From Vitrella brassicaformis CCMP3155 (Eukaryota > Protista > Chromerida): DNA of 64,000 bases. Position numbers and translations under genes: made by a program. The stretch lies in assembly GCA_001179505.1 (NCBI GenBank), contig CDMY01000624.1, positions 247,519 through 311,518 of the forward strand, in the 5' to 3' direction. Positions 1-53,213 of this stretch are shown here, piece by piece. Each line of letters starts with the position of its first letter. Position 1 is the stretch's first letter. The notes under the pieces were generated by a model that was not told the origin of the DNA, ran no database searches, and saw nothing but the letters and a program-made list of their open reading frames with translations.

Positions 1-416
1 CTGACCTTACCGATCGATGCGAGCCGGAGATAGGGCGAGAGCCCTCTGGGCGACTGGCTAGTCGTTTACTCTAGGGCGGCAGGGCCGTGCACACTCGACA
101 AGATGGATACGCCGCTGATGGACATCGCGCCACGTGGCGGCTTCTCGTCCAACGGTGAGTGGGAAGATGCCGCGATTGGCTTACTCACAAGCGCACCCTG
201 ATAAGTTGTTTGCTGTCTGTGCGTGTCGGCGGTCTTCAGGTCTGCCTTGTCAACAGGCGGACTGATTGCTTGACTGAGCGTCTGTGCGTACGGCTGGCCG
301 TCTACTTGTACGTTTCATAGGCAAGCACTGATTGATGCGCACATGAACGCACACACCAAGTGGCCGCCCATCTCTGTGTATGGTCTATGGTGCAGCTCTC
401 TGTCTGAGTGAGAGCG
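1..416. repeat. Upstream block shared by ankyrin-array units (copy 1, cut by window start)
   Basis: Motifs GATCGATGCGAGCC, GAAGATGCCGCGATTGGC, GGTCTTCAGGTCTGCCTTGTC and GATAGGCAAGCACTG recur at ~12610-13020 and ~19450-19700; each copy precedes an ATG exon reading MxxRPDTDMAS. Confidence 0.85.
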
Positions 417-2606
417 ATGTTGTCTGGTCGTCCCGACACCGACATGGCCTCCCCTGCTATGGCGGACGGTGGCGATGGCGATGAAGGTACACTCCACTCA
501 GACAGATGCAGCACATCACACACACAGCATCATCGCCAAGCGTCGTGTGTGTGCATGTGTGTGTTCTGTGTTCCTTTGCAGATCATGTAGCCGTGGAGGA
601 ACGGCGTGACGGCAGCGCACAGCCAGACGGACCAGATCGCAATGGTGGCGATAGTGGTGGGTAACAAAATAATGCAACACACACGAGCCCCCGCCGTCGG
701 TCGCTATCCTCTTTGTGTGCATGGGTGCAGGTAGAGGTGTTGGCAGTGTTGGTGGGCATCAGCGCAGCGGAGAGAACCGGAGCCGACATAACGGAAGTAG
801 GTAAACACCCACAGACACACAAATCAGAATCGCCCCTCATTCATCATTGCTAATCTGTCTGTCCGCCTTGCGATCCACAGATCCGCCGTTACCCCTTGGC
901 TGGAAGAGCTTGGAGAACGGGGTGATCGACGTCGACTTCCCTCGTGGCACCAGTGACGCCAGCAGACGCTTGTCCGAGGCCGTCATTCGCCGCACAATCA
1001 CTGACGAACAGCAGATGACGCAGCTGATTCAGCAGAATGGAGCCGACCTCAATGTGGAGCCACGGCTGTGGGTGGCGGGCACCAGGTTCGGCTATGTAGC
1101 TTATCCGCTGCTGTCGCTGTGCATCTTTAACCTCACTGACAACAGCGTGCCGTCCATCTGGGCAGCCGACGTTGGCGGTGCTGGCACTCCCGTTGCCATG
1201 CCGAAGTGGCAGACCCGCGGCCTCCAACTCGCCATCATGCGGGCTCTCATCGAAGGCGGTGCCGACATCAATGGTGGGGGTCCACGCAGACCCATCCGAG
1301 TGGCCATCGCCTCGTGTAACCGGGAGGCATTTGGGCTCCTGATGAGTCAGCCAGGTACACACGCATTCACGGCACTCACGACACGGAACACACACCATGA
1401 TGTCTGTCTGTCTGTCTGCCTGTTCCAGGCATCCAGCTGCCGGGGCTCTGCGTGATGGAGCTGCCGATCCCGTTGCCGACGGATCAGCCGACTGAGGAGA
1501 GCGAGGCCATCCTGCTGTCCTTCTACCAGCTGCTCATCCAGCGGGACAGCAGCCTCGCGACCGAGCGGCGCCCGAATTGCATGAATCCGCTGCATGCGGC
1601 CATGACGCCTCCCGTCTGCTCCCAGCAGTTCATCGACAGCTACATCGACATGCTGGTGGCCGACGGGGCGGACATCAGGGCCGTGCACAACAATGGGTGG
1701 ACGCCATTACACGTCGCGGCCTGTCAGGGTTCCCACTGTGTCGCTGCGTCTCTGTGCCGGCGTCTCACCGCTGCCGACATCAACAGAGGGAGGCCGACTG
1801 ACCTGCACCCCCTCACACCCCTCACCGTCGCTGCCGTGCGGCTCGATTTAGTCGCCCAGCAGCTGCAGAACGACAACACGGGGCGGGCCGTGAGGGACCG
1901 GGCCAGCATCCGGATCCCCAACCTCAAGACCACCATGCGTGTGCTCCTCCAGGCGGGCGCTGACATCGCTCTCATGCCCACAGCCACAGAGCATGACCGC
2001 CGCCGTCGCCAGCTTGTGCTGCCCGAGTATGCGACAGTGCTCAACAATCTGCCGGATGACGTCATGGCTGCCGTCAACGCCGCCCTCGCCCCTCAGCGGT
2101 CACTCGCGGCCTTGCTCGGCCCCCGGCTGGCCGTCGGCCCGCAGGAGGCCCCCATCTTCGCCTGGCGCCTCGCATCGTACCTCTTCGACATGGCGGCCGC
2201 CACCCAGACCATCACTGAGGCCATCGGCTTGCGGCACTCCGCCATGGCCCGGCGTGTGCGTGCGGCTGTCGAGCACTTCGTTTGGTCGGGAGTGTACGAG
2301 GCCAGCAGCAACAGGGAGGTGGTGGGCGGAATGGCCGATGTGGGCGGCGAGATGGTGCGGATGCCGCTGCAGTGCTTCGCCATCAATGCGGGATAGCAGG
2401 ACGGACAACATCGGCTGCTGGGTGTGCGTGAGGTGGTGCACAGGGCCCGGCTGGACGAGGCGTCCCAGCATGGCGTGGCGGGGCTGGTCAAGGGCTTCAA
2501 CGAGCACCTGGGGGATGACGACTGCCAGTTCCAGTGGCAGCAGCTGGGGTGGGTCGAGAGGGGCCGGGACGGCAGAGCGACCTTCAGACCGCTGCAGCTG
2601 ACGTGA
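417..2606 (+). CDS. Ankyrin-repeat protein, array copy A1 (type-I C-terminus); in-frame TAG at 2394-2396 removes the last ~70 aa
   Basis: First exon MLSGRPDTDMAS at 417; module exon ~881-1354, intron 1355-1428, large exon from 1429. Ankyrin motifs GADINGGGPRRPIRVAI and GADIRAVHNNGWTPLHVAACQG. Copy A2 has CAG at the TAG position and the frame continues to TGA 2606. The small 5' exons are not fully resolved. Confidence 0.8.
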
Positions 2607-31700: not shown

Positions 31701-32238
31701 GCAGAGGAGAGATCCTGCTGCCCTTGGCTGCCTTCCAGAAGGACGCGGCGAACCCCACAGCCGTCTGGGCGTCGGGTGCATGCCCCTCGTGGCACCGCCT
31801 GGCAATTTCTTGGACGATGTCGCGCCATGCCGTCTTGCGTTTGTGCAGCGCTGAGCGCTCGCAGAGGCTGGACAGCTGCCCGTAGTTGAGGGAAGACAGA
31901 GCAGAGGATGCAGCAGGCTGAGCGCCGCTGAGAGCAGCGAGACGATGGATGAACAGTCGCATGAGCCCTACAGAGAGAGGGAGGACGGTTGGATGGATGG
32001 ATGGATGGTTATTGTGGGGGGAGGAAAACTGACTTCCCAAAAAGCTCGCACTTCTGCTCGGACCCTTTGTGTTTTTGGTGCCACCCTTGAGGACGGGAGG
32101 GAGAGGAGGACAGCGGCGAAAGCTGCGATGCCTTGTGGCGCCAGCCGGAGGCACCAATGAAACATGTGAGCCACACCGCACCAGACAGTCACGCACCACG
32201 CACACGTGGACACACAGGGAGCGCGGCGCCTGCCGCAC
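28784..32238 (-). CDS. Helical-repeat (HPR/FASTK-like) protein with partial RAP-like C-terminus; probable organellar RNA-binding protein
   Basis: Long exon ORFs 30445-32238 and 28784-30448 interrupted by GT-AG introns. Helical repeats such as LSLSELCYLLRLMVEI and LTNEQLVMALEFLASVRY. C-terminal SNMHRQVASAL...WEVDVDPGPFSVDLLM resembles the start of a RAP domain. Arg/Ser/Ala-rich N-terminus; start codon uncertain (32238 or 31962). Confidence 0.6.
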
Positions 32239-32800
32239 AGACAGATGCAGGCAGCGACAGACAGCCAGGCCGGGTGGGATTCATGGCTGGTGGGGTGGGA
32301 GGGAGGGAGGCAGGAGCGAGGATGACGGTTGCCTAGATGTGCTGACGTGACGTGACAGCTGGGTTACATAGTCAGGCTGGCGAGACCAGCAGGCGGACAG
32401 ATGGCATTCGTTCGGCGGGCAGTTTTCCGTCTCTCTGGTGTGGGTGCAGTGCATCTGTGTGGCCTTCTTGTCATGGCTCCCATGTGTGTGGTCTATGCGT
32501 TGTTGTGTTGTGTGCAGAGCCTCGCGTTTGCGGACCGCGAATCGAAGAAAGCCCGTGTTGATCCACAAGCATCAGCCGAGCCGCAGACGAACCAGACAGA
32601 GGACAATGAGCCGAGTGAGCAGAGCGAATGGGGGCGAATCAGAGAGAGTGGGCGTCAATCCTCTGCCTGTGTGTGTGTGTGCGCATGTTGTGTGGTGTGG
32701 TGTGGTGTGTTGCAGGAATGGCCACTGAGCCTTCGAATCTGACGAACGGAACGACCGAAACGAGAGGTACACAACATGGCACACAACACACACACACACA

Positions 32801-33225
32801 CTTGACCCGCAGAGAGCACCAGCCAACGCACCACTGGCTGCCCTAGTATGTGTGTGTATGTGTGTGTGCTGCGTGTCAGATTTGGCTGTAGAGTCAAGTA
32901 CAGTTGACCCATCTGTTCCTGCTGCCGACCAGCAGGAAGAGCAGCAGCCTGCTGAGGCGCCCGACCAGTCGATCGTCGAGCCGCATCAGCAGCGTCAGCA
33001 CCAGCCTTCTTTGCCCCAGGAGAACGGCCTGCCATCGGTGGTCGAGCCCTGCCTATCGTCGGCCGGCCCCCCAGCAGCCCCACCGCCCGCGCCTGTGTCT
33101 GTGTCTGTGTCAGTGTCTGTCAATCCCCAGCAGCACCACTCCGACCCCTCCCCGGCTCCCCTCCCCTCCCCGGCTCCCCAAGACTCAACAACGGGGTGCT
33201 CACAGAGTGTAGACGCTGTCGGTGT
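32801..33225 (+). repeat. Inverted copy of 63576-64000 (5' exon region of the USP7-like gene), cut by the gap
   Basis: The reverse complement matches 63576-64000 with no difference seen; same peptide DLAVESSTVDPSVPAADQQEE. An upstream exon MATEPSNLTNGTTETR begins at 32718. Confidence 0.92.
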
Positions 33226-33525
33226 NNNNNNNNNNNNNNNNNNNNNNNNNNNNNNNNNNNNNNNNNNNNNNNNNNNNNNNNNNNNNNNNNNNNNNNNNNN
33301 NNNNNNNNNNNNNNNNNNNNNNNNNNNNNNNNNNNNNNNNNNNNNNNNNNNNNNNNNNNNNNNNNNNNNNNNNNNNNNNNNNNNNNNNNNNNNNNNNNNN
33401 NNNNNNNNNNNNNNNNNNNNNNNNNNNNNNNNNNNNNNNNNNNNNNNNNNNNNNNNNNNNNNNNNNNNNNNNNNNNNNNNNNNNNNNNNNNNNNNNNNNN
33501 NNNNNNNNNNNNNNNNNNNNNNNNN
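33226..33525. other. Scaffold gap (300 N)
   Basis: Run of exactly 300 N. Confidence 1.
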
Positions 33526-33606
33526 CCCCCCAGGCCACATGCGCTTCTATCGTCCGTCCGTGTGTGTCTATGCCTTTGGTAATGACGGTAATGATACTAT
33601 CAACAG

Positions 33607-34595
33607 GGTCAGTGCTGCATTGCGTCGAGCCGCATCTTTGTCGAGGAGTCCATCTACGACGACTTTGTTGAGAGGGTCAGACGATCACACGCACATACAC
33701 ACATCATGGGTGCACATTAGATTACCTCTCTGTGTGTGTGTGTTAGGCGTTGAAGCGTTCCAAGGAGGCCAAGCTGCTAGACCCCAAAGACCCCGAGTGG
33801 TACGGCTGATGGACGGCAAAGCGGATGGATGGAGTCACGTCTGTGTGTGTGTGAATGCTTTGTCAGCACGCAGGGCCCTCAGGTGGACGTCAAGCAGTTC
33901 GACCGCATGTACGCTCCAAACCAGACAGACAGACAGACAGACACTCTGACAGAGACGCACCCACATGGAGGTGTCACTCTGTCTGTGTCTCTGTTGTGCT
34001 GGTCAGCATCAACTACATCCACACCGGCAAAAAGGAGGGCGCCACGCTGCTCTGCGGTGGGCAAATCACACACACCGCAACTGTGCGAAGTCCCTCTCTC
34101 TCTGTCTGTGTGTGTGTGTGTGTGTGTCCAGGCGGCAATCAGTACGGTTCAGAGGGCTACTGGGTCGAGCCGACCATCTTCACAGTCCGTCAGGACACAG
34201 ACATACACAGAGAGAGAGAAATGGAAGTCGATAAGACTCCATTGCATCCCGCCCTCTGCCTGCATCTGTGTGTGTGCAGGACGTCAAGGACGACATGCGC
34301 ATCGCCAAAGAGGTCCGCCAGGCATCCTGATAACACACATGGAAACACATGTCCCCCTCTCCCCCGCTCTCTCTGTGTGTGCAGGAGATTTTCGGTCCCG
34401 TCATGTGCATCCTCAAGTTCAAAGTGAGCGACGAATCAATGACACCGATGTGTGTGCATGTCCGTTTGCGCGTCTTTGTGTGTCTTTAGACGCTCGACGA
34501 GGCCATCACGCGAGCCAACACCACCTCGTACGGACTCGGCGCCGGTACACACACACACACACACACACATAAACGGGGAGCCATGTGGAAGTGCA

Positions 34596-34993: not shown

Positions 34994-36234
34994 AGACAGA
35001 GCAACACGCCCATCCACACACACGACACGTCATACTGACACACACAAATGTAAGTGGGCGCGAGAGTGAGAGCGGTGCATGGCTAATGAATGAGAGAGAA
35101 GAGAGAATGCATTGTGTGTGTTTTTTCCCTTGATCGTGGCCGATTTTGTGCTGAGATGTGTGTGACCATCCTTAATGCGTTGGGACTGGTGTACGGCCGC
35201 CGTGTGCACATGGCCTCTGTGCATGCGGAGCTCGTAGACCAGCTGCCGCGCACAGGGGAGGGCCGCACACAGACACACAGACACAGAGAGAGAGGAAAAG
35301 AAGGACTGCCTGTGTTTTTCCGCATGACGACTGACTGGTGATGACTGGTGGGCGGGCGATTTGTTCCGCATAGTGTGTGTGGACGTGTGGCACTTCTCTG
35401 TGGTTGAGGATCTCCGTCACCTCACCGTCTGTCTTCACAGATCAGATGTGAGTGCGGTGAAGCGATGAGGATCCTCACGAACTGAGGAATGCCACACACT
35501 CCGCACCTATACAGACAGGCACACAGGAGGCTTCTGCTACCGTGACTCGTCTGCCTTTTCGTCTGCATCTCGCTGCATGGGTCGTTGGTTGTGATGTGCG
35601 TTGGGGGGCGGGGCGGCTCCTCATTTGACGCACTCAATCAGCCATGAGTGACATTTGTGTGAGGAAGCTGACGTGAGCCATCGGACGGAATTATGGGGGG
35701 GATGGACAGAGAGAGAGAGAGGGAAGTGAGCCCAAAGAGGAAGTTTCTGTGTTGCCCGTGTCCACTGACCGACCGACACCCCAGGCCCCCTCTGAATGAA
35801 TGACCACCATCTTTTTCCGTCGGAGGTGCTTTCGCGACGTCCCTCCACCTGTCAGGTCCCTGTATGTGCGCAGCTTGGTTGAGTTGAGTTGACTTGACTT
35901 GACTTGAGTGAGATCTGTGGTACGTGTGATACTGCCTAGTTGGTTGGTCCCCTCCCTCTGGATGTTTGTGCATCATTTTTTTCCCTCATCCCCTCAGCCA
36001 AGGCAGGTGATGACACTGGGAGGGAGTGAGCGACAGAGTGACGGATAAAAAACAACGCAGCGAACAAACGCAGCAAAAATGGCAATGAATGCGATCCTCT
36101 GCAAGCTCAGCTCGCAAACTCGGGGAGTGAGAAAAAGCCGGAGCGTCCACGCTGGCAGTTGATGGTGACCTTGCCAGCTATTGACCCGATCTGCCTTGGC
36201 TGTTGATCTTGGTTGATTGAAGGTTGACCACCCC

Positions 36235-38552
36235 ATGACCTCATCTTCGTCGCACACCACCGGCCTCTCTGGACTGGGTAGGCTCTATCCACCAGATGGC
36301 GGTTGATTCATTCTCTCCCCTCCCTGTGTGTTGTGTGTCATTCATGTGCTTCTCTCCGTCTTGTGATTGACTCTGTCTGTCTGTCTGTCTGTGTGTCAGG
36401 TGTGATTGGCAACGGCACGTTTGGCGCCATCATCGACAAGAGGGGACGATACGTGTGGGCATGTCCTGGTCAGTCAGTCACACAAACATGACAACCACAC
36501 ATCAATCCATCTATGTGTGTGGTTGGGTGTGATTGTGTGTGTGGTCGTGTGTTCAGGTCATTTCGGCAGCGACCCGATCTTCTCGTCGCTGCTCAACAAC
36601 GACTCTGAGGAAACAGGCTTCCAGGACATTGTGCTCACGGGTACGTATCATTGGATGCATTGGATGGGGGCGTCTGGGTGGGGGTGGTGTGAGATACACT
36701 ACACACGGCCATCGGTCCTGACTGCCTGTCTGTCTGTCACCCCCCTCTCTCTCTCTCTCTCTGCGTGTGTGTGTGATAGACTTTGTGTCGTCCCACCAGC
36801 GGTATCTGCCGCACAGCGCAATCCTCTGTACCGCACTCACCAGCGGAGGTACACACACACACATACAGAGGGATGGTACACCTGAATTCGCACACGTGTG
36901 TGTGTGTGTCAGCCAATGACGTGGTGGAGATCCGCGACTTCGCGCCTCGGTTCCAGATCTTTGACAGGATACACTGCCCCTTCCAGGCAAGCAGGGCAAC
37001 CACACACTTGAGGGAGGGAGGGAGGGAGGGAGAGAGGGAGGTGCGATGGGTCCACCCACTTGACGTGTGTGTAGACGTTTCGCATCTTGGAGCCGATCCA
37101 CGGCGACCCCCAGATCACCATCCGGATCAGACCAACCTTCAACTACAACAGCACAGATGGCTTCCAGGTACATCAGACACACAGACAGACAGATGGCCGT
37201 GTGTCTACAAAAAAAGTCTGTGTCTGTGTGTGTATGTGTGTGTGTCGATCGTGATAGACGCGCGGCAGCCACCACATTCGCTACTGCGGTCCGAGGGACA
37301 CATGGCGCGTCACGACCAACGCACCGGTCGGTCATCCAGACAGGCCGTCTGTGCGTATCTCAAATGAAATGGGTGTGTGTCGTCTCTCGTGTGTGTCTGT
37401 GTGTGTGTGTGTGCAGATAGCGTCCATTCTTGAGGAGACCCCCTTTCTGCTGCAGAACAGGCTCTTCATCATCATGGGCACCGACGAATCTCTGCAGGCA
37501 CTGAACTGAACAGCCCACTTAGACACACACACACAGACACACACACACACAAAGGGCGTGTGTGTGTGTATGTGTCCATGTGTGTGTCGCATCGGTATGT
37601 TGGTGTGTACAGTCTCCGATATGCGACGTCTGTCTGGATTTCGAGCGCAAGTGTCTGTCCTACTGGAACGACTGGGTCACACGACTCGCACTGCCCGTCG
37701 AGTACCAAGAGGTTCTCACTGTCATCACACACATCCATCCATCCATCCACCCACACATGGCTGTGTGTGTGTGTCGTGTAGGTGTTGATCCGCGCCTCCA
37801 TCACGCTGGCCGTGCTCAACAGCGAAGACCAGGGCGGACTTGTGAGCTCCCTCACTATGGGCATCCCTCTCGCAAGCGACGCGCCGGCCAGCAAGGTCCG
37901 TCTGCATCTGTGGCATACACACAGCGACACACGTACTTGACCTGCACACGGGGGCGTGTTCTTGTGTTGTGCTATGGTGTGGTGTGGTTAGGATGAGCGC
38001 GTGTGTCGTCTGTACGACGAGTGTCTCTCCCTGTCTGTGCTGCGCAACTTCGGGCTGTTCCCCATCGGCAGGAAGTTCCTGGAGTTCCTCAAGAACCGGT
38101 GCGTTTGAGCACACGGATGTCCTCCACCCACCTGTTGTGTACTCGCCTCTGTGTGCGTGTGTGTGTGTGGGTGTCAGCGTGTTTTCATCCTCCCTGCCGC
38201 AGCTGACTTACGGCATTCACACGGTGCGGACACACCTGCACTTAGATGGGAATGCAGATGTGTGTGTGTGGGTGTGTGCAGGAGACGAGCATCCCGTTGG
38301 AGCGAGCTCGGTATCTGGCGGGCTACAAGGGAATGGGCAGCGTCAACATCGGTACACACACACACATACACACACCGACGATGCTTCACACGTGACTGCA
38401 CTGCACTGCACTGCACTGCACACAACAAACAGGTGGCCTTAGCTCGGGTGACGACCAGCAGCAGGGAGGGGCCGACAAGCAGCAGCCCACACACGACTCA
38501 ACAGCAGCCACCCACCAGCACAATGGTCAGCACACACAACCACACTTAGACA

Positions 38553-38591
<39 letters not shown>

Positions 38592-39701
38592 GAAGGGAGA
38601 GAGAGACAGACAGACTCTGTCTGTCTGCGAGTAGGTGTGATTGTGGAAGGGGGCAGGGGCATGCGGCCTCTGGTCGGGCTGCTCGTCATCGCATTGGCAC
38701 AGGTACACACACACACACACACACACATGCACATGTGTGGTTGCTGGCTGTTGGTTGCTGGTCAGGTGTTTTACGATCCTCGTCTGCTGCCGCTGTCGAC
38801 CCACAAGCTCTTCGAAAGGCTCGAACACCTGGCAGGCGTCGCCTTCAGCGCCTTCATCGAGATGCAGCACGCCATACAGGGCGTACTGCAAGCCGAGAAA
38901 ATTGAGGGTACGCAAGGCAGCAACCGAGCCCTCCCCCATTGTGCATCCAAGCGCATCGATCCGTGTGTGTCGTTGAGGCCATGCAGCAAGCCGCTCGGTG
39001 CGTCCCCCCTCTCACCCAGCACCACCACCAGCAGCGGCAGCAGCACCAGCGGCTGACACATCAGCAGCATCGGCTGCCGGGCCAGAGGGATGGTTCGACG
39101 ATGAACCGCGGTAGGTGGCTGACCAATCAAATCAATCACACGTCGGGAAACACTGACACTGGATGTCGCGGTTGAGTGCGTGTAGGTCTCTGACGGTGTG
39201 GGAGGACGAGGACGACGACTTCTTGCGTCAGATCGAGCACGCCAGAAGCACCATGCAGGCGCTCGTGACCGACATGCACTCCCCCCCACCGCCCCCGCCA
39301 CCCGCACACAACGACACACGACGGTACGGTACACACACCAGTGAGTGGCAAGAGAAGGGAAGCCCGTTCATTGCATGTGTCTGCGTGTGTGTCATTCATT
39401 CCTTCATCACAGGCCTCACTCCCGCACGCCGTTCCCCCCGCCCCCGCCCCCTCCCGCACACCCGCACGCTTACCAACACCCACAGAGGTCTGGTGCGCAC
39501 ACACATCGATCATGACACAACAGGGACGGACGGATGGATGGATGGATGGACGTGTGTTTGTGTGTGTGTGTCTGTGTGCAGGCGTGGCAATGTGGCAAAG
39601 AGGTTGCCATTGGTGCACACCTTCTCGTCTGTGCTGTGCTGGGCGGCGGCTGAGCGGATCGCCCAGGTCTCGGAGAGGCTTGAGCAACACGAGAAGGTCC
39701 A

Positions 39702-39736
<35 letters not shown>

Positions 39737-40752
39737 GGAGAGTACATCCTTCAGTTCCTGACATGAATGTCGTTTGTGTGTATGGTGTGTATTGGATGGC
39801 ATCCATCAATCCCATCAAATCCATCCATGTATCAGAAGCTGCAGTGGTGGAGTCGCGCCAAGTACATGCGGGAGACCATCCTCACACACGCATATAACCC
39901 ACACAGACAGACATTCACCACACACTGGAAGGTAAGCAAATAAACTAACTACTGCCTGGCCTGCAACACACACACATCTCTCTCCCTCCCTCCCTCCCTC
40001 CCTCCCTCTGTGTGTGAAGGGTCACTCGGTCGGCCCGTCGTTGTTGCGTCTGGCCGAGGTGGGCTTCATCAGCGGCAGCGACGTCCGATTCGCAAACACT
40101 GTGCGGGCCTTCGAACAAGACGCAGCCATGACCTGCACCTGCAGCTACAGCGCCCTGGTCAGCGCCAGCCTGCAGCTGCACTGTTCACAGGACCCACACA
40201 CACACGAGCCAGGTGGCAGCAAAGACAGCACCAACAAGCAGCAGCAGCAGCAGCAGCAGCAGAGACAGCGGCCTCCCTTGCTGAACAGCAGCCCGACCAC
40301 TACAGCTGCTGCGGCCTCTCTGTGCGATTCGCTCAAGGCGAGTGCGACGACCTTCACGACCAACACGCTGCTGTGGTACGTCGAGGCGCTGCGGGCGTGC
40401 GGCCGGGCCGTGGAGGCGCGCCTGCTCTTCGACTCACTGCTCAGGTGAGGTGACTGACCTGGCCCCCACACACACAGAGAGAGAAAAACAGAGGGGCACA
40501 CTGCACTTGGGGCATTGCATGCCATCGTGTAGGTCTGCGAATGAGTGCGGTCTGCTCTCTCAGTCGATTGACATGAAGTAAACCAGCCAGCCACACCACA
40601 CAGGGAGGAGGTGTATGTGGGACCGACGTGTGCTGTGCTGTGGTATGTGTGTGTCCACTAGGAGCGGTGAGTTGTGGGGCAACTTCCCCCACGCGGCCAC
40701 CTGCCTGTCGCTCATTCGGTGCGGCACACGGCTCTCCAGGAACTGGAACTAA
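36235..40752 (+). CDS. Glycoside hydrolase family 15 homologue (bacterial-type trehalase/glucoamylase architecture), multi-exon, probably catalytically inactive
   Basis: Spliced peptides follow the GH15 consensus in order: GVIGNGTFGAIIDKRG, DFAPRF, IRIRPTFNY, YWNDWVTRLALPVEYQEVLIRASITLAVL...GGLVSSLTMGIP, RYLAGYKGMGSVNIG, TVWE, HTFSSVLCWAAAER, SLLRLAEVGFISGSDVRFANTV, WYVEALRACGRAVEARLLFDSLL, ANECGLLSQSID, ELWGNFPHAATCLSLI. TAA at 40750-40752. Confidence 0.82.
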
Positions 40753-41084
40753 ATGAACGTCTGTGGCCTGACGAACGGACGCCGTGTGTACAGTACAGTG
40801 TACTTCCACGTATGGATGTGTGTGTGTGACCTCCATCGCTCATCCATTGATTGGTTCATTTGCATGAATAGATCAAGTGAATGTACAGTACACCAAGTGA
40901 AGTGTCTGTGAGCCACCCCACCCACTCCGGTGGGTTCCGTCGTACATACATCCATGATCCATCCATCGATCGCAAAAAAGAGTGAGTGTCACCGTATTGA
41001 TTGCATTCACACACTAATGTGATGTGCCTCATCGATTCGATGGACTGGACAGACCGACTCCGGTTACTGTACTGCAGGCCTCCC

Positions 41085-41842
41085 TCAGTCGTAGTGCAGC
41101 AGCCTTTTCTTCTCCTCAGCGTCCCTGTCCGCCTCGTGCGCCTCTTCCGACCGCCCCTCCGTCCGTGCAGGCACTGCGGCATGCCTCGCGGAGGTCGCTC
41201 TGGACCGCACCTCCCGAAGACCTCCCGCCTCTGTTATTCTTTGTTCAACTGATCGGTTAATACATGTAATGAACAAAGAAAGGCGACAGGAAATGGCCAA
41301 TTCAATTCGTGGAGACTTGACGAGTGACTTGGTGTCGCCTCCGCCTTTGCGAAATCTGCACCCACAGAAGGAAGCGACCCGGTCAGTCAGGCAGGCAAGC
41401 AGGACGGCAATGGATGGTGCACTCACTGCTGGCCTGCGTACTGTACTTGGTGTGCAGATGATGATCGGATTCCTGAAACCCGACCCTGTGTCGCCGAAGG
41501 CGTCTTGAAGGCTGAGAGAGCCATCCAGCCCCTTGTCAACACCCTTGAACGTCACGTCCTCAACGCGCGTGCCGACGGGCGCAAACAGACTCTGCAGCCC
41601 GCGGAGGTCGGGCACATCCTTTGTGATGACGCACGCGGGCTGTTCCAGCCTGTTGACGTGTGATATGAAGCGGTAGATTCCCGACCCCTTGAGCTCAGCC
41701 TGCATGCTCATCGCACCAGCCTCTGCGTCGCAACACACACACATCAAAGCAAGGAGGAAACAAACGGGTGAGTGAGTGAGGCAACGGCAGCGCGTGGGGG
41801 GGAGGGGAGGCTTTTCCCACTCACCATATTGGGCCGGGTCCA
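41085..41842 (-). CDS. Hypothetical small spliced protein
   Basis: Candidate exons MDPAQYG|gtgagt and (cag)EAGAMSMQAELKGSGIYRFISHVNRLEQPACVITKDVPDL...NPIIICTPST|gtacgc. No family recognised; the 3' end is unresolved. Confidence 0.4.
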
Positions 41843-42358
41843 TGACTCTGCTGCGGTGCTGCGGTAGATCTGCAGATCTGCAGGACGGAGGAGGAGATAA
41901 GCAGGTGAAGGGAGATTGGCTGAGAGGCAGATCAACGCGAGCAGATGGAAGCTGCAAATGACGCGCACACCGTCCGCGTGCCTTCTCCAGTGCCTCTCCC
42001 TATGTGGGGCATCTGTTTACTCCAAATTGCGAGCTCCCACGAAAATCCCGCTCCCACGCGTCTCAGCTTTTGTCTGAGCATGAATCCAACCGTCGCACGT
42101 GCGCCACTGCTTCTCACGTACGTAAGACCAACAAAATGAAGTTGTACGACATCTCTCTGTACAGATACCTGCCAAATGACCATCGATATTTCAGCGTCTG
42201 TCTCTGCGTACTACGTACCAATGAATGCAGGTTCGCGTCTGAGGCTCGGCATCCGTCCCGTCGTGCCCAGCACTTCACGGCACCCACCGGAGACGGCCGA
42301 CACCCGAGTCATTACCGACCCCAACAAGCAGCAGAGCCTGTAGAAGCAAGGGAGGCCG

Positions 42359-43410
42359 ATGTTGCGGTTGCCCTTGAGGACGATGATGACACGGGGCTGC
42401 TGCCGAAGGGGTACTACGACGATGAGGGGGTTCAGGTACGTACGGAATGAGTGGGAATTCTGCGGAACTTGCGCGCACACTGTGTCTGTACACATCCATC
42501 TCCCGTACGCTGAGCAGGACTACTACTTCTGCCAGACAGAAAAGCGGATAGTTGGCGAAACGCGGGTCGCGGCGGACGTGTATGGCCTGTGCTGTGTGTC
42601 TTGCTTGGGCGGTTTTGAAGTGAGCCCCATCGGAAAGGTGCGTGACTAATACTCACTCATAGCATCAGGAAAAGCCATGCATTGCATCGTTGATGATCGT
42701 TCTTTGTCCTGGTTCTCCTCAAGGCTATCGGGATGCACCCAGTCGCGTCCTTCTGCCTGGCAGCGCTTGCTGTAGCGATCCAGTTGGCGTTCCTGACCGT
42801 CCTGGACATCAACGTGTGGAATGTGCTCGTCTCAACGCTGGGCGACATGGAGATAACGAGCGAGGACTTGCGGAGAATACGGGAGGCGTTCGATCAGCTG
42901 ATCGAGGCGCAGACGGTGCACCTGACAGAGCAAGACTACCCCATTGATGATCTGATATGCAGTATCGCTGGAGTCGTTGTCCTCATGTTGGTGCTCGGTC
43001 CCGACATTCGTGAGCGTGTCAAGTGTCTCGAGCTGACGGGCTGTATGGCTTTCCCCCTGACCGAGACAATGTGGGCCGACTATGAACTGAGGGTACGCTG
43101 CACAAATGCACCCACCGATGCCTTCGACTGGCTGCTATTTCAAGCACATACCGATTGTTGATTTGTTGACCGCGCGTCTGCCAACCAACCAGATGTCTCA
43201 TCCCACGTGGCGGCCCCTGCTGCCTCACCGGACGCGTTCGATCATCGAGAAAAGCGCAGGATACTTCTACCTCTATCTCGCGGCACTCGCCAACTTCACT
43301 GGTCAGTTCCACGAAGGGAGACACCACAGCCAGTCAGCTTCCGTCCTTTCACATTTCCGACGGCTGGCTGTGTGTCAGGCTTCTGTATGGACTTCTACTT
43401 GGAAGCAATG
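42359..43410 (+). CDS. Multi-pass membrane protein, N-terminal/middle exons (boundaries uncertain)
   Basis: In-frame exons ending 42436, 42518-~42637, 42724-43092 and 43193-~43301. Hydrophobic segments HPVASFCLAALAVAIQLAFLTVL and LICSIAGVVVLMLVLGP. Confidence 0.5.
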
Positions 43411-44358
43411 TGAGCAACTTCCAACGTGGCATCCTCGAGTTCAGTGCGACAATATCACATAGACCAGATGACGCACATTAAGATAAACAGGTCTGAGGGT
43501 GTGTGTCCGTTCAGCGCTCATCCAGATACATGAAACCCAAAACAGATGACATCCATACACTCCAATCCACCGATCGTCACCCCTCCTAAGCTAACACACA
43601 AATATCTGTCCCCTTCCCTCACGACCTCTCCACCTTCCCTCTGTCTGCGACCGCTGTAGGCAACACACACACAGAGAGACAGTCATAGAGAGGCACAAGC
43701 ATGTGTGTATTGCATTGCGGTCCTCACCCAGGGTAACATGCATCTGACCTTTGATTTCTCATCTCTCGTCGCATGTCATTCTGAGACGACCGGCTCCCGC
43801 AGCCTGGCCCAGTTCAGGCTCTGCAATCGGCTGGAATGGTGCGCAAGACCGGTCGAATCGTTTATCTCCCCGATTGGAAACCCTGCCGCAAACTCGACGG
43901 CTATGACCCTGCACTCGAGACGCGAGAGCCGTCTGCCGTGCACCTGTTGGTGGCGCACCATTCCCTCCCCCGCCCCTTCCTCTCTGTGCATGCTCTCCAC
44001 AGACCGATCGGCCGCCACGATCACTTCCGGCCAGACCTTCATGTCGCTACGGTCGGCTGCCAACTGAATGGGGAGAAAATTGAAGACCAGGGGATGATGT
44101 GTATCACGTCTCATATCCGTTTGTATGAGGTTTGTCATACCTTTGCGAGGAAGCAGTGATACTTCTCCAACTTGCCGCCCTGTGCGAAGGAGGAGGGGGA
44201 ATGACATGGGGGACAGAAGCTTCCTTCATTGTACCATACTTCACACACACACACCACACGAATACTTACGTGGCCACCACCACACGATGATGCGCTGGCC
44301 TGCATCACACAACGCAGGGACGGATCATGTCATTCGATTTCACGACGAGGCCCGGTGA

Positions 44359-45207
44359 GTGACATTGACGGACCCCGAACAAGCGCATGTGCCCTTGGCT
44401 CTGTGTCTGTCCCTCAGGGAGACAGTGCAGGACGTCCTGGGTATCTCCTTCCTCACCGATGTGGACGTCTTTCTCTTGCTTGCCCTGCCCATCCTCTCCA
44501 ATCTCTCCGTCCAAGAGGCCAACTGGCGAATCGTGGAGACGCTGCGGCCCTACCCATCGCCGTCGCTACATGCGGACGGCAAATACCAACCTGTGTACCC
44601 CACCAGGCCTCGCTGCAGCCTTAATATTGTCGGCGTGTGGGGGCGCATTCTGCTGGCGTCTCTCATCGGCACTCTCCTGACTCCCCTCTCTCTCCTCGTG
44701 CTGCTCACTGCCGCGGCCATGGCGCGAATCCGCACACGAGACAAGGCCGTGATATATCGATTGAGTGGCGTGAGTGGGATGGTGCTTGGCGCGTTCTGGC
44801 TCGGGTATGAGGCCGTGCAGCTGTGCTTGGATATCTGGCGAGCGCTGCTGACCTCATTCTTTGTCGGGATGCTCATCAGCTACAGCGGCCTGAGCAGTTT
44901 CAAAGCTCTCTCATGGTGGTTCACGACACGGCAGCCGAGCTCGTGGACGGCCAAATTCTCATGGGTGGCGCTGTGGAAGTCGCTGGGTCAGTTCCTGCCG
45001 CTCGGCGTGACGCTGCTGCTTCATGTGGCGACGAATCGGGCTTACTGGTGGGACATATACGAGGAGCGCCTGGAGAGGCAGGGGTTACTGGCGGGTGGCC
45101 ATCCCGGTGCCACCAGCATGGGGCAGGGCGACAGAGAGACCGGGCTGGCTGACGAAAGGACTGGGCTGTTGGCGAGCCAAGACAACGAGCTAGCGGCTGA
45201 GGAGTGA
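44359..45207 (+). CDS. Multi-pass membrane protein ORF (may be the last exon of the 42.4-43.4 kb gene)
   Basis: 282-codon ORF with ~5 hydrophobic segments (e.g. RILLASLIGTLLTPLSLLVLLTAAAM, SGMVLGAFWLGYEAV); no family recognised with confidence. Confidence 0.6.
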   Translation: MTLTDPEQAHVPLALCLSLRETVQDVLGISFLTDVDVFLLLALPILSNLSVQEANWRIVETLRPYPSPSLHADGKYQPVYPTRPRCSLNIVGVWGRILLASLIGTLLTPLSLLVLLTAAAMARIRTRDKAVIYRLSGVSGMVLGAFWLGYEAVQLCLDIWRALLTSFFVGMLISYSGLSSFKALSWWFTTRQPSSWTAKFSWVALWKSLGQFLPLGVTLLLHVATNRAYWWDIYEERLERQGLLAGGHPGATSMGQGDRETGLADERTGLLASQDNELAAEE

Positions 45208-46074
45208 CAAGTGGGCCGGGCGGGTGATTGATTGATTGATACATACGTCGACTAGTTCGCTGAGACCTTAAGGAGCATCAATCAGATCGATCTGTATATG
45301 TGGCTTAAGGTGCATGCAAACAGAGACGACATCTATCGTCACGTGAATGTATGTACAGTCGACGGACACTCACTGGCTTGCGTGAGGTCGCGTGTCTCAA
45401 CACGGTGCTGGAGTGGCTTTGATTGTAGGCAGTGCGTGTGTGCATCGGTCGATCCATGCGTTGTGGTGAGGTGGCTACACATACACAACTACATACTTGA
45501 ATGGCTGGCCGCGTGCCTCCAGTACCTCTGCGCTATCTTCAACTTTTTTTTGCCGCATGGGGGGCCCGTTGCGTGTTGGGAGGTACCGTTGAAGTGAAAG
45601 GGGGACGACCAGACACCTGGTCTACGAGTGTTGGAGACCTCACGAGCATTAGATGAACACACTCATTGGGTTGCTTCGTTGATCTGGTCTGCCCTCTAAG
45701 TAACTGAGCCAAAATGGCACACACACACTCTTGATGCTATGCATCAGACAGACCAAAAAAGGGATCAAAACACTCACGCACTCACGCAGGCCGCAGGCAG
45801 GGGGGCCTCATTCGACCCTGCATGCGTCGGACCCACTGACTGCAGAAGCGATAGAAAGCGCCAAACTGAGCCGCAGATAAGCAGCAAGCAAACAGGAAAG
45901 CAGCTGGGTACCCTCAAGCAAAGCACCCCGGCTCGTCCACCCACCCACGCTGCACAGACACACACCTCTACTGAGACACCACACACAATGAACGGTTGCT
46001 TCGACTGTACACACACGCAATGTAATGCACTCACTACCAAAACTGCCCTATACACACACGCGCACACACACGTG

Positions 46075-53213
<7,139 letters not shown>

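What the first reader, a model, noticed from the sequence alone, without database searches (positions are those of the whole stretch)
36235..40752. Bacterial-type GH15 glycosidase that has become a probable pseudo-enzyme
The protein aligns along its length to the bacterial GH15 trehalase/glucoamylase consensus as I recall it, including the N-terminal beta-domain, but key residues are replaced. The substrate-binding DYRYCWLRD motif reads DERVCRLYD (37992-38018; W to R, R to Y). The general-base motif GLLSE reads GLLSQ (CAG at 40561-40563). LDAS reads VGPS and GNFPQ reads GNFPH. The general-acid WE (TVWE, 39199-39204) is kept. The frame is intact over ~20 exons, with several low-complexity inserts, so the gene appears to be under selection. 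GH15-fold pseudo-enzymes exist as the regulatory alpha/beta subunits of phosphorylase kinase (established). This could be an independent case: a sugar/glucan sensor or scaffold, perhaps of horizontal origin (inference).
Basis: partly seen in the sequence, partly recalled or inferred. Interest (0 to 1): 0.75.

Follow-up and report, generated by a model that had tools for sequence, protein, structure and literature searches.

The report
Remodelled bacterial-type GH15 sugar-enzyme relic
The alga Vitrella brassicaformis expresses an intact 24-exon gene for a protein that keeps the whole fold of a bacterial trehalase-type (GH15) sugar-cutting enzyme. It has lost both catalytic glutamates and most sugar-binding residues, as have its relatives in dinoflagellates, Perkinsus, Chromera and one apicomplexan, so it probably binds or regulates rather than cuts, though this is untested.

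Summary
Window 36235-40752 (+) is a 24-exon gene. Its spliced product of 809 aa is identical to the public record CEM26994.1 / A0A0G4GCW7, "uncharacterized protein" of Vitrella brassicaformis. Spliced transcript contigs in four public runs carry the predicted exon joints.

The protein aligns over its full length with a proteobacterial GH15 clade (hhalign probability 100, E 2e-139). That clade sits in otsB-GH15-otsA trehalose operons. The predicted structure matches solved GH15 enzymes best (Z about 27).

These substitutions are confirmed:
- DYRYCWLRD reads DERVCRLYD.
- LDAS reads VGPS.
- GLLSE reads GLLSQ.
- GNFPQ reads GNFPH.

One claim fails. "TVWE" is not the general acid. No method aligns it there with confidence, and the canonical acid loop before helix "VHT" is gone in Vitrella. 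Only Chromera keeps WEARG there.

The remodelling is not private to this gene. It is shared by a monophyletic family in Myzozoa: chromerids, Cardiosporidium, perkinsids and dinoflagellates. In that family the base position flips between Glu and Gln at least six times.

My best reading is a non-hydrolytic GH15 derivative of bacterial origin that acts as a binder or regulator (about 0.6). A new enzymatic activity is not excluded (about 0.3). I found no paper on this family. Earlier scan notes do not mention it.

The parts
36127..40900 (+). Minimum transcribed span seen in spliced public contigs (5' UTR from at least 36127, 3' UTR to at least 40900)
   Evidence: table 8: X7 record 10 starts at 36127; X1 record 4, X7 record 11 and X8 record 13 reach 40900
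36235..36277 (+). Exon 1 (aa 1-14 plus 1 nt), start codon ATG 36235-37
   Evidence: X7 record 10 covers 36127-36279; identical to P0138
36400..36468 (+). Exon 2 (VIGNGTFGAIIDKRGRYVWACP); start of the N-terminal beta-sandwich domain
   Evidence: joint 36468|36557 in X7 and X8
36557..36640 (+). Exon 3
36780..36848 (+). Exon 4
   Evidence: joint 36848|36913
36913..36986 (+). Exon 5, followed by a GC-AG intron (donor GCAAGC at 36987)
   Evidence: joint 36984|37073 with 2 shared letters = 36986|37075 in X7 and X8
37075..37167 (+). Exon 6
37258..37326 (+). Exon 7
   Evidence: record lengths of X7 record 10 fit exons 2-8
37417..37497 (+). Exon 8, followed by a second GC-AG intron (donor GCACTG at 37498)
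   Evidence: joint 37494|37610 with 3 shared letters = 37497|37613 in X1, X7 and X8
37613..37711 (+). Exon 9 (linker helix between the domains)
37782..37895 (+). Exon 10. L257 (37869-71) replaces the invariant Glu of bacterial SIPE. A263, S264 and K265 replace R-N-W.
37992..38098 (+). Exon 11. DERVCRLYD (37992-38018 = D266-D274) lies opposite bacterial DYRYCWLRD: Tyr->E267, Trp->R271 (38007-09), Arg->Y273 (38013-15), Asp kept as D274.
   Evidence: residue roles from PMC12446779
38178..38223 (+). Exon 12
38282..38351 (+). Exon 13 (YLAGYKGMGSVNIG, opposite bacterial GYRGMGPVRVGN)
38433..38525 (+). Exon 14: low-complexity insert (aa 341-371), predicted disordered
   Evidence: (X2 record 6)
38635..38702 (+). 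Exon 15
   Evidence: record arithmetic of X7 record 10 (277 nt between exons 11 and 16)
38766..38907 (+). Exon 16 (helix alpha5 of the barrel)
38987..39110 (+). Exon 17: Pro/Ala-rich insert, then GPEGWFDDEP. F477-D478 (39094-39099) is the family-conserved FFDD motif and one candidate counterpart of the bacterial W-E.
   Evidence: acceptor set by RNA joint 38907|38987
39186..39323 (+). This is an acidic helix in a lineage-variable insert.
39413..39487 (+). Exon 19: proline-rich insert, predicted disordered
   Evidence: joint 39323|39413 in X7 and X8
39582..39696 (+). Exon 20. RRGNVAKRLPL stands where the bacterial acid loop (PDAGxWExRG) should be and has no acidic residue. It is followed by the conserved VHTFSSVLCWAAAER helix.
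39836..39931 (+). Exon 21
40020..40444 (+). Exon 22. VGPS (G628 P629, 40032-37) lies opposite LDAS. The bacterial RY...DDFG segment is replaced by a poly-Gln low-complexity insert (aa about 680-715). Then comes the conserved TNTLLWYVEALR helix.
40533..40577 (+). Exon 23. GLLSQSID with Q775 (CAG 40561-63) at the position of the GH15 general base Glu.
   Evidence: the transcripts show the same letters (table 3)
40662..40752 (+). Exon 24. WGNFPH with H790 (40690-92) opposite the bacterial Gln. Stop TAA at 40750-52.

Best explanation
This is the expressed Vitrella brassicaformis member (CEM26994.1, 809 aa) of a Myzozoa-wide protein family. The family descends from one bacterial GH15 gene of the trehalase type; its nearest relatives are proteobacterial genes in otsB-GH15-otsA trehalose operons.

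Shown: the protein keeps the complete two-domain GH15 architecture, an N-terminal beta-sandwich plus an (alpha/alpha)6 barrel. On the long stem branch of the eukaryote clade the catalytic pocket was rebuilt:
- The Arg that binds O4 of the -1 glucose became hydrophobic (Y273).
- Two pocket Trp became basic (K265, R271).
- The Tyr that holds the base became variable (E267).
- The LDAS and RY...DDFG segments were lost.
- The acid loop before helix alpha6 degenerated.
- The general base became free to alternate between Glu and Gln (Gln in Vitrella).

Inferred: the protein no longer hydrolyses trehalose or alpha-glucosides by the inverting GH15 mechanism. It is kept for a non-hydrolytic job that still uses the pocket face of the barrel. 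The most likely job is binding a sugar or sugar-phosphate ligand, or a partner protein, in cytosolic carbohydrate (trehalose or starch) metabolism. That would make it a pseudo-enzyme comparable in principle to the GH15-like domains of phosphorylase kinase alpha/beta. The absence of an N-terminal signal peptide is my reading of the sequence, not a tool result.
For: Gene and expression: the 24-exon model has one stop and is identical to P0138. Spliced contigs occur in 4 runs from 3 studies, with no base differences from the genome.

GH15 descent: hhalign of the eukaryote family against the proteobacterial clade gives probability 100, E 2e-139 and 587 columns. A bacterial GH15 HMM scores 449 bits. 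NCBIfam TreH1 gives 3.3e-26. The AF2 model has pLDDT 84. Its best structural matches are all GH15: 5z3a Z 27.5, 1lf6 Z 27.3 over 516 residues, 9ju0 25.7, 1ug9 24.2. The Atlas structural match to a proteobacterial GH15 cluster has TM 0.93.

Bacterial origin: in the tree the eukaryote clade is 100* and joins the near clade, also 100*. The otsB-GH15-otsA context is seen. The gene has 23 spliceosomal introns, and the neighbours of relative P0014 are eukaryotic.

Loss of catalytic machinery: all 22 near-clade bacteria keep W257 D258 Y259 R260 C262 W263 R265 D266, W393 E394, D465 A466, R503 Y504, E556 and Q571. All 33 eukaryote members lack most of these. The base flips between E and Q at least 6 times and is never any other residue. 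The acid loop is unaligned in all members except Chromera. The window's pre-VHT segment has no Asp or Glu. Residue roles are taken from PMC12446779.

Selection: of 98 columns that are at least 90% conserved in 54 bacteria, 44 are kept and 17 are replaced by a different residue fixed in at least 10 of 13 eukaryotes, for example R271, G628-P629 and F477-D478.
Against: - No activity or binding data exist.
- An acidic residue is always present in the conserved FF[DE]D motif. Glu is kept at the base position in about two thirds of family members. Some lineages could therefore still have a working acid/base pair.
- Amide residues can take part in base catalysis in some (alpha/alpha)6 glycosidases, such as GH95 (from my own knowledge).
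- The two new conserved basic residues suggest a defined, possibly anionic, ligand. That would fit a new enzyme as well as a binder.
- I could not inspect model coordinates, so which residue occupies the acid position in space is unknown.
- Full-length P0138 scores 18.0 bits on Pfam PF00723, below the 22-bit cut-off.
Confidence: 0.6

Rival explanations
1. It is still an enzyme, but with a new substrate or mechanism. Examples: a glycosidase acting on a different, perhaps anionic or phosphorylated, sugar; or an inverting phosphorylase or transglycosylase that needs no protein base. It would use the conserved Asp/Glu of the FFDD motif as the acid and the new Arg/Lys residues to hold the substrate or phosphate.
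For: - Seventeen formerly invariant positions are replaced by a different residue that is itself fixed across the family, including R271, K/R265, F477-D478 and G628-P629.
- An acidic residue is always present in FF[DE]D.
- The base position is restricted to Glu or Gln only.
- Asp274 and Arg268 of the pocket motif are kept.
- Phosphorylases with the same fold, GH65 and GH94, appear among the structural matches.
- The same family can host a changed mechanism, as in dextran dextrinase (PMC12446779).
Against: - The E/Q flipping (at least 6 changes) and the variable residues at the former Tyr, Arg and Gln contacts of the -1 sugar look like relaxed constraint rather than a redesigned catalytic centre.
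- The canonical acid loop is disordered or degenerate.
- No sampled lineage keeps both a canonical acid loop and a Glu base. Chromera has WE plus Gln; dinoflagellates have Glu but no acid loop.
Confidence: 0.3
2. It is a decaying pseudogene or an annotation artefact whose open frame is accidental.
For: Many low-complexity inserts are present. The Pfam score of the full protein is below the cut-off.
Against: - The 2430-nt frame is intact across 24 exons.
- Correctly spliced transcripts occur in several runs.
- Orthologues at 45-65% identity occur in Chromera, Cardiosporidium, perkinsids and dinoflagellates, with many invariant residues.
- The AF2 model is confident.
Confidence: 0.03
3. It is bacterial contamination of the assembly, or a very recent transfer of a bacterial GH15 gene.
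For: The closest non-eukaryote relatives are proteobacterial.
Against: - The gene has 23 spliceosomal introns with the host's CA/GT-rich style.
- The stem branch is long, 1.25 changes per site.
- The eukaryote clade broadly follows the expected organismal groups: chromerids, perkinsids and dinoflagellates.
Confidence: 0.01

Closest known systems
Proteobacterial GH15 genes in otsB-GH15-otsA operons (e.g. Mesorhizobium xinjiangense P0047, Geomonas oryzisoli P0049); putative trehalases, none characterised as far as I found
   Same: Same two-domain architecture and collinear over the full length, at 32-40% identity to the window protein. They are the nearest clade in the tree. The Atlas structural match has TM 0.93.
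   Different: The bacteria keep every canonical GH15 motif: RNWDYRYCWLRDA, PDAGxWExRG, LDAS, RY..DDFG, GLLSEDID and WGNFPQ. The window protein has lost or changed all of them. It also carries four disordered inserts and 23 introns.
GH15 trehalases TreH1/TreH2 (NCBIfam NF041084, NF041085)
   Same: These are the best named family models for both the window protein (92 bits, E 3e-26) and its bacterial relatives (308 bits).
   Different: The scores are far below the equivalog cut-offs of 820 and 1000 bits. The catalytic residues are not kept.
Solved bacterial GH15 enzymes: Thermoanaerobacterium glucoamylase 1LF6/1LF9, Kribbella isomaltose glucohydrolase 5Z3A, Arthrobacter glucodextranase 1UG9/1ULV, Gluconobacter dextran dextrinase 9JU0
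   Same: These are the best structural matches, Z 24-27.5, covering both domains. There is weak but significant profile similarity (1lf6 1.7e-6, 9ju0 1.1e-4).
   Different: All use two Glu, the W-E acid and the base or nucleophile, plus Arg-Asp, Trp and Tyr contacts in subsite -1 (PMC12446779). The window protein has Q775, no demonstrable acid Glu, and Y273, R271 and E267 at those contacts.
Glucoamylase-like (GH15-like) domains of phosphorylase kinase alpha/beta subunits (PMC10978961 names the domain; their non-catalytic status is from my own knowledge)
   Same: A GH15-fold domain kept in a eukaryotic protein that is not known to hydrolyse sugars. This is a model for a regulatory or scaffolding use of the fold.
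   Different: PhK subunits are about 1100-1200 aa, carry extra C-terminal regulatory domains and sit in a kinase holoenzyme. The window protein ends with the barrel and keeps the bacterial N-terminal beta domain. No PhK chain was among the 50 best structural matches. Common descent was not tested in a tree.
Other catalytically degenerate carbohydrate-enzyme homologues used as regulators, such as plant beta-amylase-like BAM4/BAM9 and class II trehalose-6-phosphate synthases (my own knowledge, an analogy only)
   Same: An enzyme fold of storage-sugar metabolism is kept under selection after loss of catalytic residues.
   Different: Unrelated folds and lineages. No evidence here for any specific partner.

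Membership tests
Glycoside hydrolase family 15 (Pfam PF00723 Glyco_hydro_15; bacterial type with TREH_N domain) | Sequence match to the family model above the curated threshold | tested here: inconclusive
   Full protein P0138: 18.0 bits, E 0.0014, below the 22-bit cut-off. Its C-terminal 246 aa alone (P0001): 22.7 bits, just above it. No PF19291 hit. Homology is nevertheless beyond doubt from profile methods: hhalign probability 100, E 2e-139, and 449 bits on a bacterial GH15 HMM.
Glycoside hydrolase family 15 | N-terminal beta-sandwich plus (alpha/alpha)6-barrel architecture | tested here: met
   AF2 model with pLDDT 84.2 and pTM 0.85. 1lf6 matches at Z 27.3 with 516 aligned residues over 7..807; 5z3a at Z 27.5 over 222..808. 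Atlas TM 0.93.
Glycoside hydrolase family 15 | General base Glu in the GLLSE-type motif | tested here: not met
   Q775 (CAG 40561-63) in genome and transcripts. E is invariant in 54 bacterial sequences. The eukaryote family has E or Q.
Glycoside hydrolase family 15 | General acid Glu in the W-E dyad, about 8 residues before helix alpha6 (VHT/FT motif) | tested here: not met
The HMM leaves profile positions 395-408 unaligned. The 24 residues before V564-H565-T566 have no Asp or Glu.
Glycoside hydrolase family 15 | Subsite -1 contacts: Tyr...Trp-x-Arg-Asp motif, and the Arg of the RY segment at subsite +1 | tested here: not met
   Tyr->E267, Trp->R271 and Arg->Y273; only Asp274 is kept. The RY..DDFG segment is replaced by a low-complexity insert. 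Residue roles from PMC12446779.
Glycoside hydrolase family 15 | Inverting hydrolysis of alpha-glucosidic or trehalose bonds | not testable with these tools
   Needs an enzyme assay.
GH15 trehalase equivalogs TreH1/TreH2 (NCBIfam) | Score above the equivalog cut-off | tested here: not met
   92.1 bits against a cut-off of 820, and 74.8 bits against 1000.
Phosphorylase kinase alpha/beta regulatory subunits | GH15-like domain followed by the PhK-specific C-terminal regulatory domains, and membership by descent | tested here: not met
   The protein ends at the barrel (aa 809). Its nearest relatives are proteobacterial GH15. No PhK chain is among the top 50 structural matches. A joint tree with PhK sequences was not made.
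Myzozoan GH15-like family (unnamed; UniProt 'GH15-like domain-containing protein' or 'uncharacterized') | Shared derived motifs: D-x-R-x-C-R-L-x-D/E, FF[DE]D, VGPS, TNTLLWY.EALR, G-L-L-x-[EQ]-x-x-D, WGN.P | tested here: met
   All are present in the window protein. It groups with Chromera (96-98*) inside a 100* eukaryote clade. It is 65% identical to the Cardiosporidium fragment.

The most novel reading that the evidence does not exclude
An ancestor of Myzozoa captured a proteobacterial trehalose-operon GH15 gene and turned it into a non-hydrolytic sensor or regulator of a sugar or sugar-phosphate, such as trehalose, trehalose-6-phosphate or phosphorylated alpha-glucan. The ligand would be held by the newly basic pocket (K/R265, R271) together with the retained Asp274 and the Glu/Gln at the old base position. 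This would be a second, independent conversion of the GH15 fold into a regulatory module, parallel to phosphorylase kinase alpha/beta. It would be conserved from dinoflagellates to an apicomplexan.
Probability: 0.3. Interest if true: 0.7.

Novelty: new variant of a known kind. Interest (0 to 1): 0.5.

Why it matters
Catalytically degenerate relatives of sugar enzymes often act as regulators of storage-carbohydrate metabolism. None derived from GH15 appears to be described outside phosphorylase kinase.

This family is conserved across chromerids, perkinsids, dinoflagellates (including coral symbionts) and at least one apicomplexan. It comes from a bacterial trehalose-operon gene. It shows a clear signature: the fold is kept, the pocket is rebuilt and the catalytic base is free to toggle between Glu and Gln.

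It offers a tractable case of how a transferred bacterial enzyme is repurposed in eukaryotes. It is also a candidate regulator of trehalose or starch metabolism in ecologically important algae and parasites. If the protein instead proves active, it would define a new GH15 specificity or mechanism.

Tried and rejected
- Pfam on ten exon translations found no GH15 hit. PDB phmmer with exon 22 and exon 10 found none. The pieces are too short.
- I never sent a typed or joined model to a search tool. The joined CDS was built from window coordinates in local scripts: once to check the frame and once to compare it with P0138. One search also merged the separately aligned exon fragments into one display row. 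After listing of cluster members returned the identical public protein P0138, I used that id.
- mafft --addfragments with exon peptides misplaced the low-complexity exons, giving 142 clashes. I used it only for the conserved exons.
- phmmer of a near-clade bacterial protein against the PDB gave no hit. Profile searches gave weak GH15 hits plus spurious designer-PPR hits to one helix hairpin.
- Long ORFs beside the gene have no Pfam family, so the gene neighbourhood gives no functional hint.
- Literature searches for GH15 together with dinoflagellates, chromerids or Perkinsus found no paper on this family.
- Earlier scan notes hold nothing on GH15 or trehalase.
- I considered the FFDD motif as the true counterpart of the W-E acid dyad. 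MAFFT supports this. HMMER does not, and remnants in Chromera (WEARG) and P0021 (PDAG) just before the VHT helix argue against it. I left it open.
- I considered a compensating carboxylate at E769 (N-E-C-G-L-L-S-Q). It is not shared by all Q-type members: P0022 and P0003 lack it.
- A residue-level active-site overlay was not possible, because the tools do not expose model coordinates.

Full report
**Gene model and expression**

The + strand between 36235 and 40752 holds a gene with short introns rich in CA/GT and GGAT repeats. I set splice sites by reading frame and by GT/GC-AG boundaries. This gave 24 exons, a CDS of 2430 nt and a product of 809 aa with a single terminal stop at TAA 40750-52.

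I laid public runs on 36100-40900. Four of them (X1, X2, X7, X8; three studies) hold spliced contigs. These contigs carry the predicted joints, including:
- two GC-AG introns (donors at 36987 and 37498);
- the short exons 14, 15 and 19, shown by a joint or by record arithmetic.

One RNA joint (38907|38987) corrected my first acceptor for exon 17 by three codons. No base differences from the genome were listed, so the CAG codon at 40561-63 is also CAG in the transcripts.

The runs are only guessed to be RNA, but contigs without introns can hardly be anything else. The transcript extends at least from 36127 to 40900.

**Handling of the spliced model**

Single exons found no GH15 family in Pfam and nothing in the PDB.

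I then ran exon 22 (window:40020-40442) against 1.84 billion representatives. It returned a 246-aa fragment identical to the C-terminus (P0001) and a set of homologues. A cluster look-up returned P0138 (809 aa, CEM26994.1 / UniRef A0A0G4GCW7), an 'unnamed protein product / uncharacterized protein' of Vitrella brassicaformis CCMP3155. A local comparison showed it to be identical to my 24-exon model.

From then on I used P0138 by reference. No typed or joined sequence was sent to any search tool.

**Is it GH15?**

Pfam's GH15 model scores the full protein at 18.0 bits, below the 22-bit cut-off. The C-terminal fragment alone scores 22.7 bits. By that one criterion membership is borderline. Every more sensitive test is unambiguous:
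- NCBIfam's GH15 trehalase model TreH1 gives E 3.3e-26.
- A word search with the Chromera orthologue P0002 found about 85 proteobacterial GH15 proteins of about 595 aa at E 1e-107 to 1e-75. Ordinary GH15 (Streptomyces and others) scored only 1e-38 and weaker.
- A profile of 17 eukaryote members against a profile of 22 of these bacteria gives hhalign probability 100, E 2e-139 and 587 aligned columns, end to end.
- A bacterial GH15 HMM scores the window protein at 449 bits.
- An AlphaFold2 model built with a 67-sequence alignment has mean pLDDT 84.2 and pTM 0.85. It shows an N-terminal beta-sandwich and a helical barrel.
- The best structural matches to that model are all GH15: isomaltose glucohydrolase 5z3a (Z 27.5, 320 residues), bacterial glucoamylase 1lf6 (Z 27.3, 516 residues spanning 7..807), dextran dextrinase 9ju0 (25.7) and glucodextranase 1ug9 (24.2). 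Other (alpha/alpha)6 families score 22.8 or less.
- The ESM Atlas independently gives a proteobacterial GH15 cluster at TM 0.93.

**What the nearest bacteria are**

In Mesorhizobium the near-clade gene lies between a trehalose-phosphatase gene (PF02358) and a trehalose-6-phosphate synthase gene (PF00982), with touching or overlapping reading frames. In Geomonas the same two genes lie a few kb downstream. With the TreH1/TreH2 hits, this makes a trehalase-type ancestor likely. That is an inference; I found no characterised member.

All 22 aligned near-clade proteins keep the canonical motifs RNWDYRYCWLRDA, PDAGxWExRG, LDAS, RY...DDFG, GLLSEDID and WGNFPQ.

**The substitutions**

Positions are taken from three alignments. 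Residue roles come from the acarbose complex of dextran dextrinase and its comparison with other GH15 enzymes (PMC12446779).

| Bacterial GH15 residue and role | Window protein | State in the eukaryote family |
|---|---|---|
| Tyr that hydrogen-bonds the base | E267 | variable |
| Pocket Trp | R271 | Arg in 12 of 13 |
| Arg that binds O4 of the -1 sugar | Y273 | hydrophobic throughout |
| Asp binding O4/O6 | D274 | kept |
| Glu of SIPE | L257 | Leu in 12 of 13 |
| Trp of RNW | K265 | Arg in 10 of 13 |
| D-A of LDAS | G628-P629 | fixed in the family |
| RY...DDFG segment (holds the subsite +1 Arg) | poly-Gln low-complexity insert | not alignable; six of 13 members have a gap |
| General base Glu | Q775 | Glu or Gln |
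| Gln of GNFPQ | H790 | variable (Ser, His, Cys and others) |

**The general acid**

W487-E488 ('TVWE') lies in an acidic, lineage-variable stretch. Chromera has TWAV there, P0009 has YGWA, and most dinoflagellates have FF followed by other residues.

In bacteria the W-E dyad sits about eight residues before the conserved VHT helix. The evidence on that position is as follows:
- A bacterial GH15 HMM run with all filters off aligns that loop in only one eukaryote member. That member is Chromera, where WEARGL-RVHT matches WElRgrervHT with posterior 8-9. In all others, including the window protein, profile positions 395-408 stay unaligned.
- The 24 residues before V564-H565-T566 of the window protein (PPAHPHAYQHPQRRGNVAKRLPLV) contain no Asp or Glu. 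Dinoflagellate sequence P0021 still has PDAG there.
- MAFFT instead places the bacterial W-E on the family-conserved motif FF[DE]D, which is F477-D478 in the window.
- hhalign places W on F477 but separates the E by ten columns, without confidence.
- AF2 models residues 475-522 with moderate confidence (pLDDT 61-75). It models residues 523-560, the stretch before the helix, as disordered.

I could not inspect coordinates, so the spatial occupant of the acid position is unknown. What can be said is that no Glu is demonstrably kept. The best candidate carboxylate is D478, not E488.

**Family and phylogeny**

Homologues with the same derived motifs occur in:
- Chromera velia (P0002, 50-57% identity);
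- the apicomplexan Cardiosporidium cionae (partial P0195, 65% identity over 260 aa);
- Perkinsus chesapeaki and 'Perkinsus sp. BL_2016';
- many environmental sequences related to them;
- the dinoflagellates Polarella, Gymnodinium, Polykrikos and Symbiodiniaceae, plus MMETSP transcripts.

The contig of the compact member P0014 carries eukaryotic neighbour genes (arrestin, TFIIS, TMA7, LYR and others), so this branch is not bacterial.

In maximum-likelihood trees rooted on distant GH15:
- the eukaryote sequences form one clade (SH-aLRT 100);
- that clade sits on a long stem of 1.25 changes per site;
- it joins the proteobacterial near clade (100), and whether it is sister to that clade or nested in it is unresolved;
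- inside the clade, Vitrella pairs with Chromera (96-98), and perkinsid-like and dinoflagellate sequences form their own groups.

This fits one old transfer from a bacterium into an ancestor of Myzozoa, followed by vertical descent. The 23 introns rule out contamination.

**Pattern of constraint**

Take the 98 alignment columns that are at least 90% conserved in 54 bacterial GH15 proteins. Of these, 44 are kept in at least 10 of 13 eukaryote members. Another 17 carry a different residue that is itself fixed. The remaining 37 are variable.

The former catalytic base is Glu in 21 and Gln in 12 of 33 eukaryote members and is never anything else. It needs at least six changes on the tree, five of them forced by well-supported branches. 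A residue that must be a carboxylate for catalysis would not behave like this. A residue that only has to fill a space and form hydrogen bonds would.

No sampled lineage combines a canonical acid loop with a Glu base. Chromera has WE plus Gln. Dinoflagellates have Glu but no acid loop.

**Interpretation**

Shown:
- descent from GH15;
- bacterial (proteobacterial, trehalose-operon type) affinity;
- retention of the fold;
- expression;
- family-wide loss of the canonical catalytic and subsite -1 residues;
- continued constraint on a rebuilt pocket.

Inferred: the protein no longer performs inverting hydrolysis of trehalose or alpha-glucosides, and it serves as a binding or regulatory module. I put this at about 0.6.

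The main rival, at about 0.3, is a changed enzymatic activity. The points in its favour are:
- the family always keeps an acidic residue in FF[DE]D;
- it keeps Asp274 and Arg268;
- it has gained two conserved basic residues;
- related folds include phosphorylases, which need no protein base.

Pseudogene and contamination readings are contradicted by the data.

**Novelty**

The protein exists in public databases only as 'uncharacterized'. Some dinoflagellate relatives are auto-named 'GH15-like domain-containing protein'. Full-text searches found no paper dealing with GH15 homologues of chromerids, dinoflagellates or perkinsids.

The kind, a glycosidase fold kept without its catalytic residues, is known; phosphorylase kinase alpha/beta is the GH15 example. 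The earlier notes of this scan mention other glycosidase relics in the same genome (GH16, GH17) but nothing on GH15.

Noticed in passing
window 36987-37074 and 37498-37612: Two of the 23 introns use GC-AG rather than GT-AG boundaries (donors GCAAGC and GCACTG). Both are confirmed by spliced contigs.
   Followed up: partly
P0002 (Chromera velia A0A0G4GTT1), residues about 683-700: The Chromera orthologue alone keeps a canonical GH15 acid loop (TAGVWELPEDWEARGLRVHT) directly before the VHT helix, although its base is Gln. Dinoflagellate sequence P0021 keeps only PDAG there. This suggests the acid loop decayed independently in several lineages.
   Followed up: partly
P0195 (Cardiosporidium cionae, partial, 258 aa): An apicomplexan fragment is the closest relative found: 65% identity to window residues 11-271. 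The family is therefore not restricted to free-living or photosynthetic myzozoans. Only the N-terminal part is in the record.
   Followed up: partly
L001:2623-6618 (Mesorhizobium xinjiangense) and L002:6001-13233 (Geomonas oryzisoli): The nearest bacterial GH15 genes are embedded in, or lie next to, trehalose-6-phosphate synthase and phosphatase genes (the otsB-GH15-otsA arrangement). This clade has no solved structure detectable by phmmer.
   Followed up: partly
window 40350-40440 (aa 735-765, TNTLLWYVEALRACGRAVEARLLFDSLL): This helix hairpin gives spurious but 'significant' profile hits to designer pentatricopeptide-repeat proteins in the PDB and weak TPR_14 hits in Pfam. It is a trap for automatic annotation.
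   Followed up: no
P0025 (Perkinsus chesapeaki, 1206 aa): The public gene model fuses a ribosomal-protein-like N-terminus, the GH15-like protein and a C-terminal leucine-rich-repeat region. This is probably a merged gene model, not a real fusion.
   Followed up: no
window 38998-39158: A very high summed contig depth occurs here in all four runs, with many loose ends. It lies in the CAG/CCA-rich low-complexity part of exon 17 and is probably cross-mapping of similar repeats from other genes.
   Followed up: no
window 28784-34572 and 41085-46347: Long ORFs flanking the gene (up to 597 aa) have no Pfam family at E <= 0.001. I did not work out what they encode.
   Followed up: no
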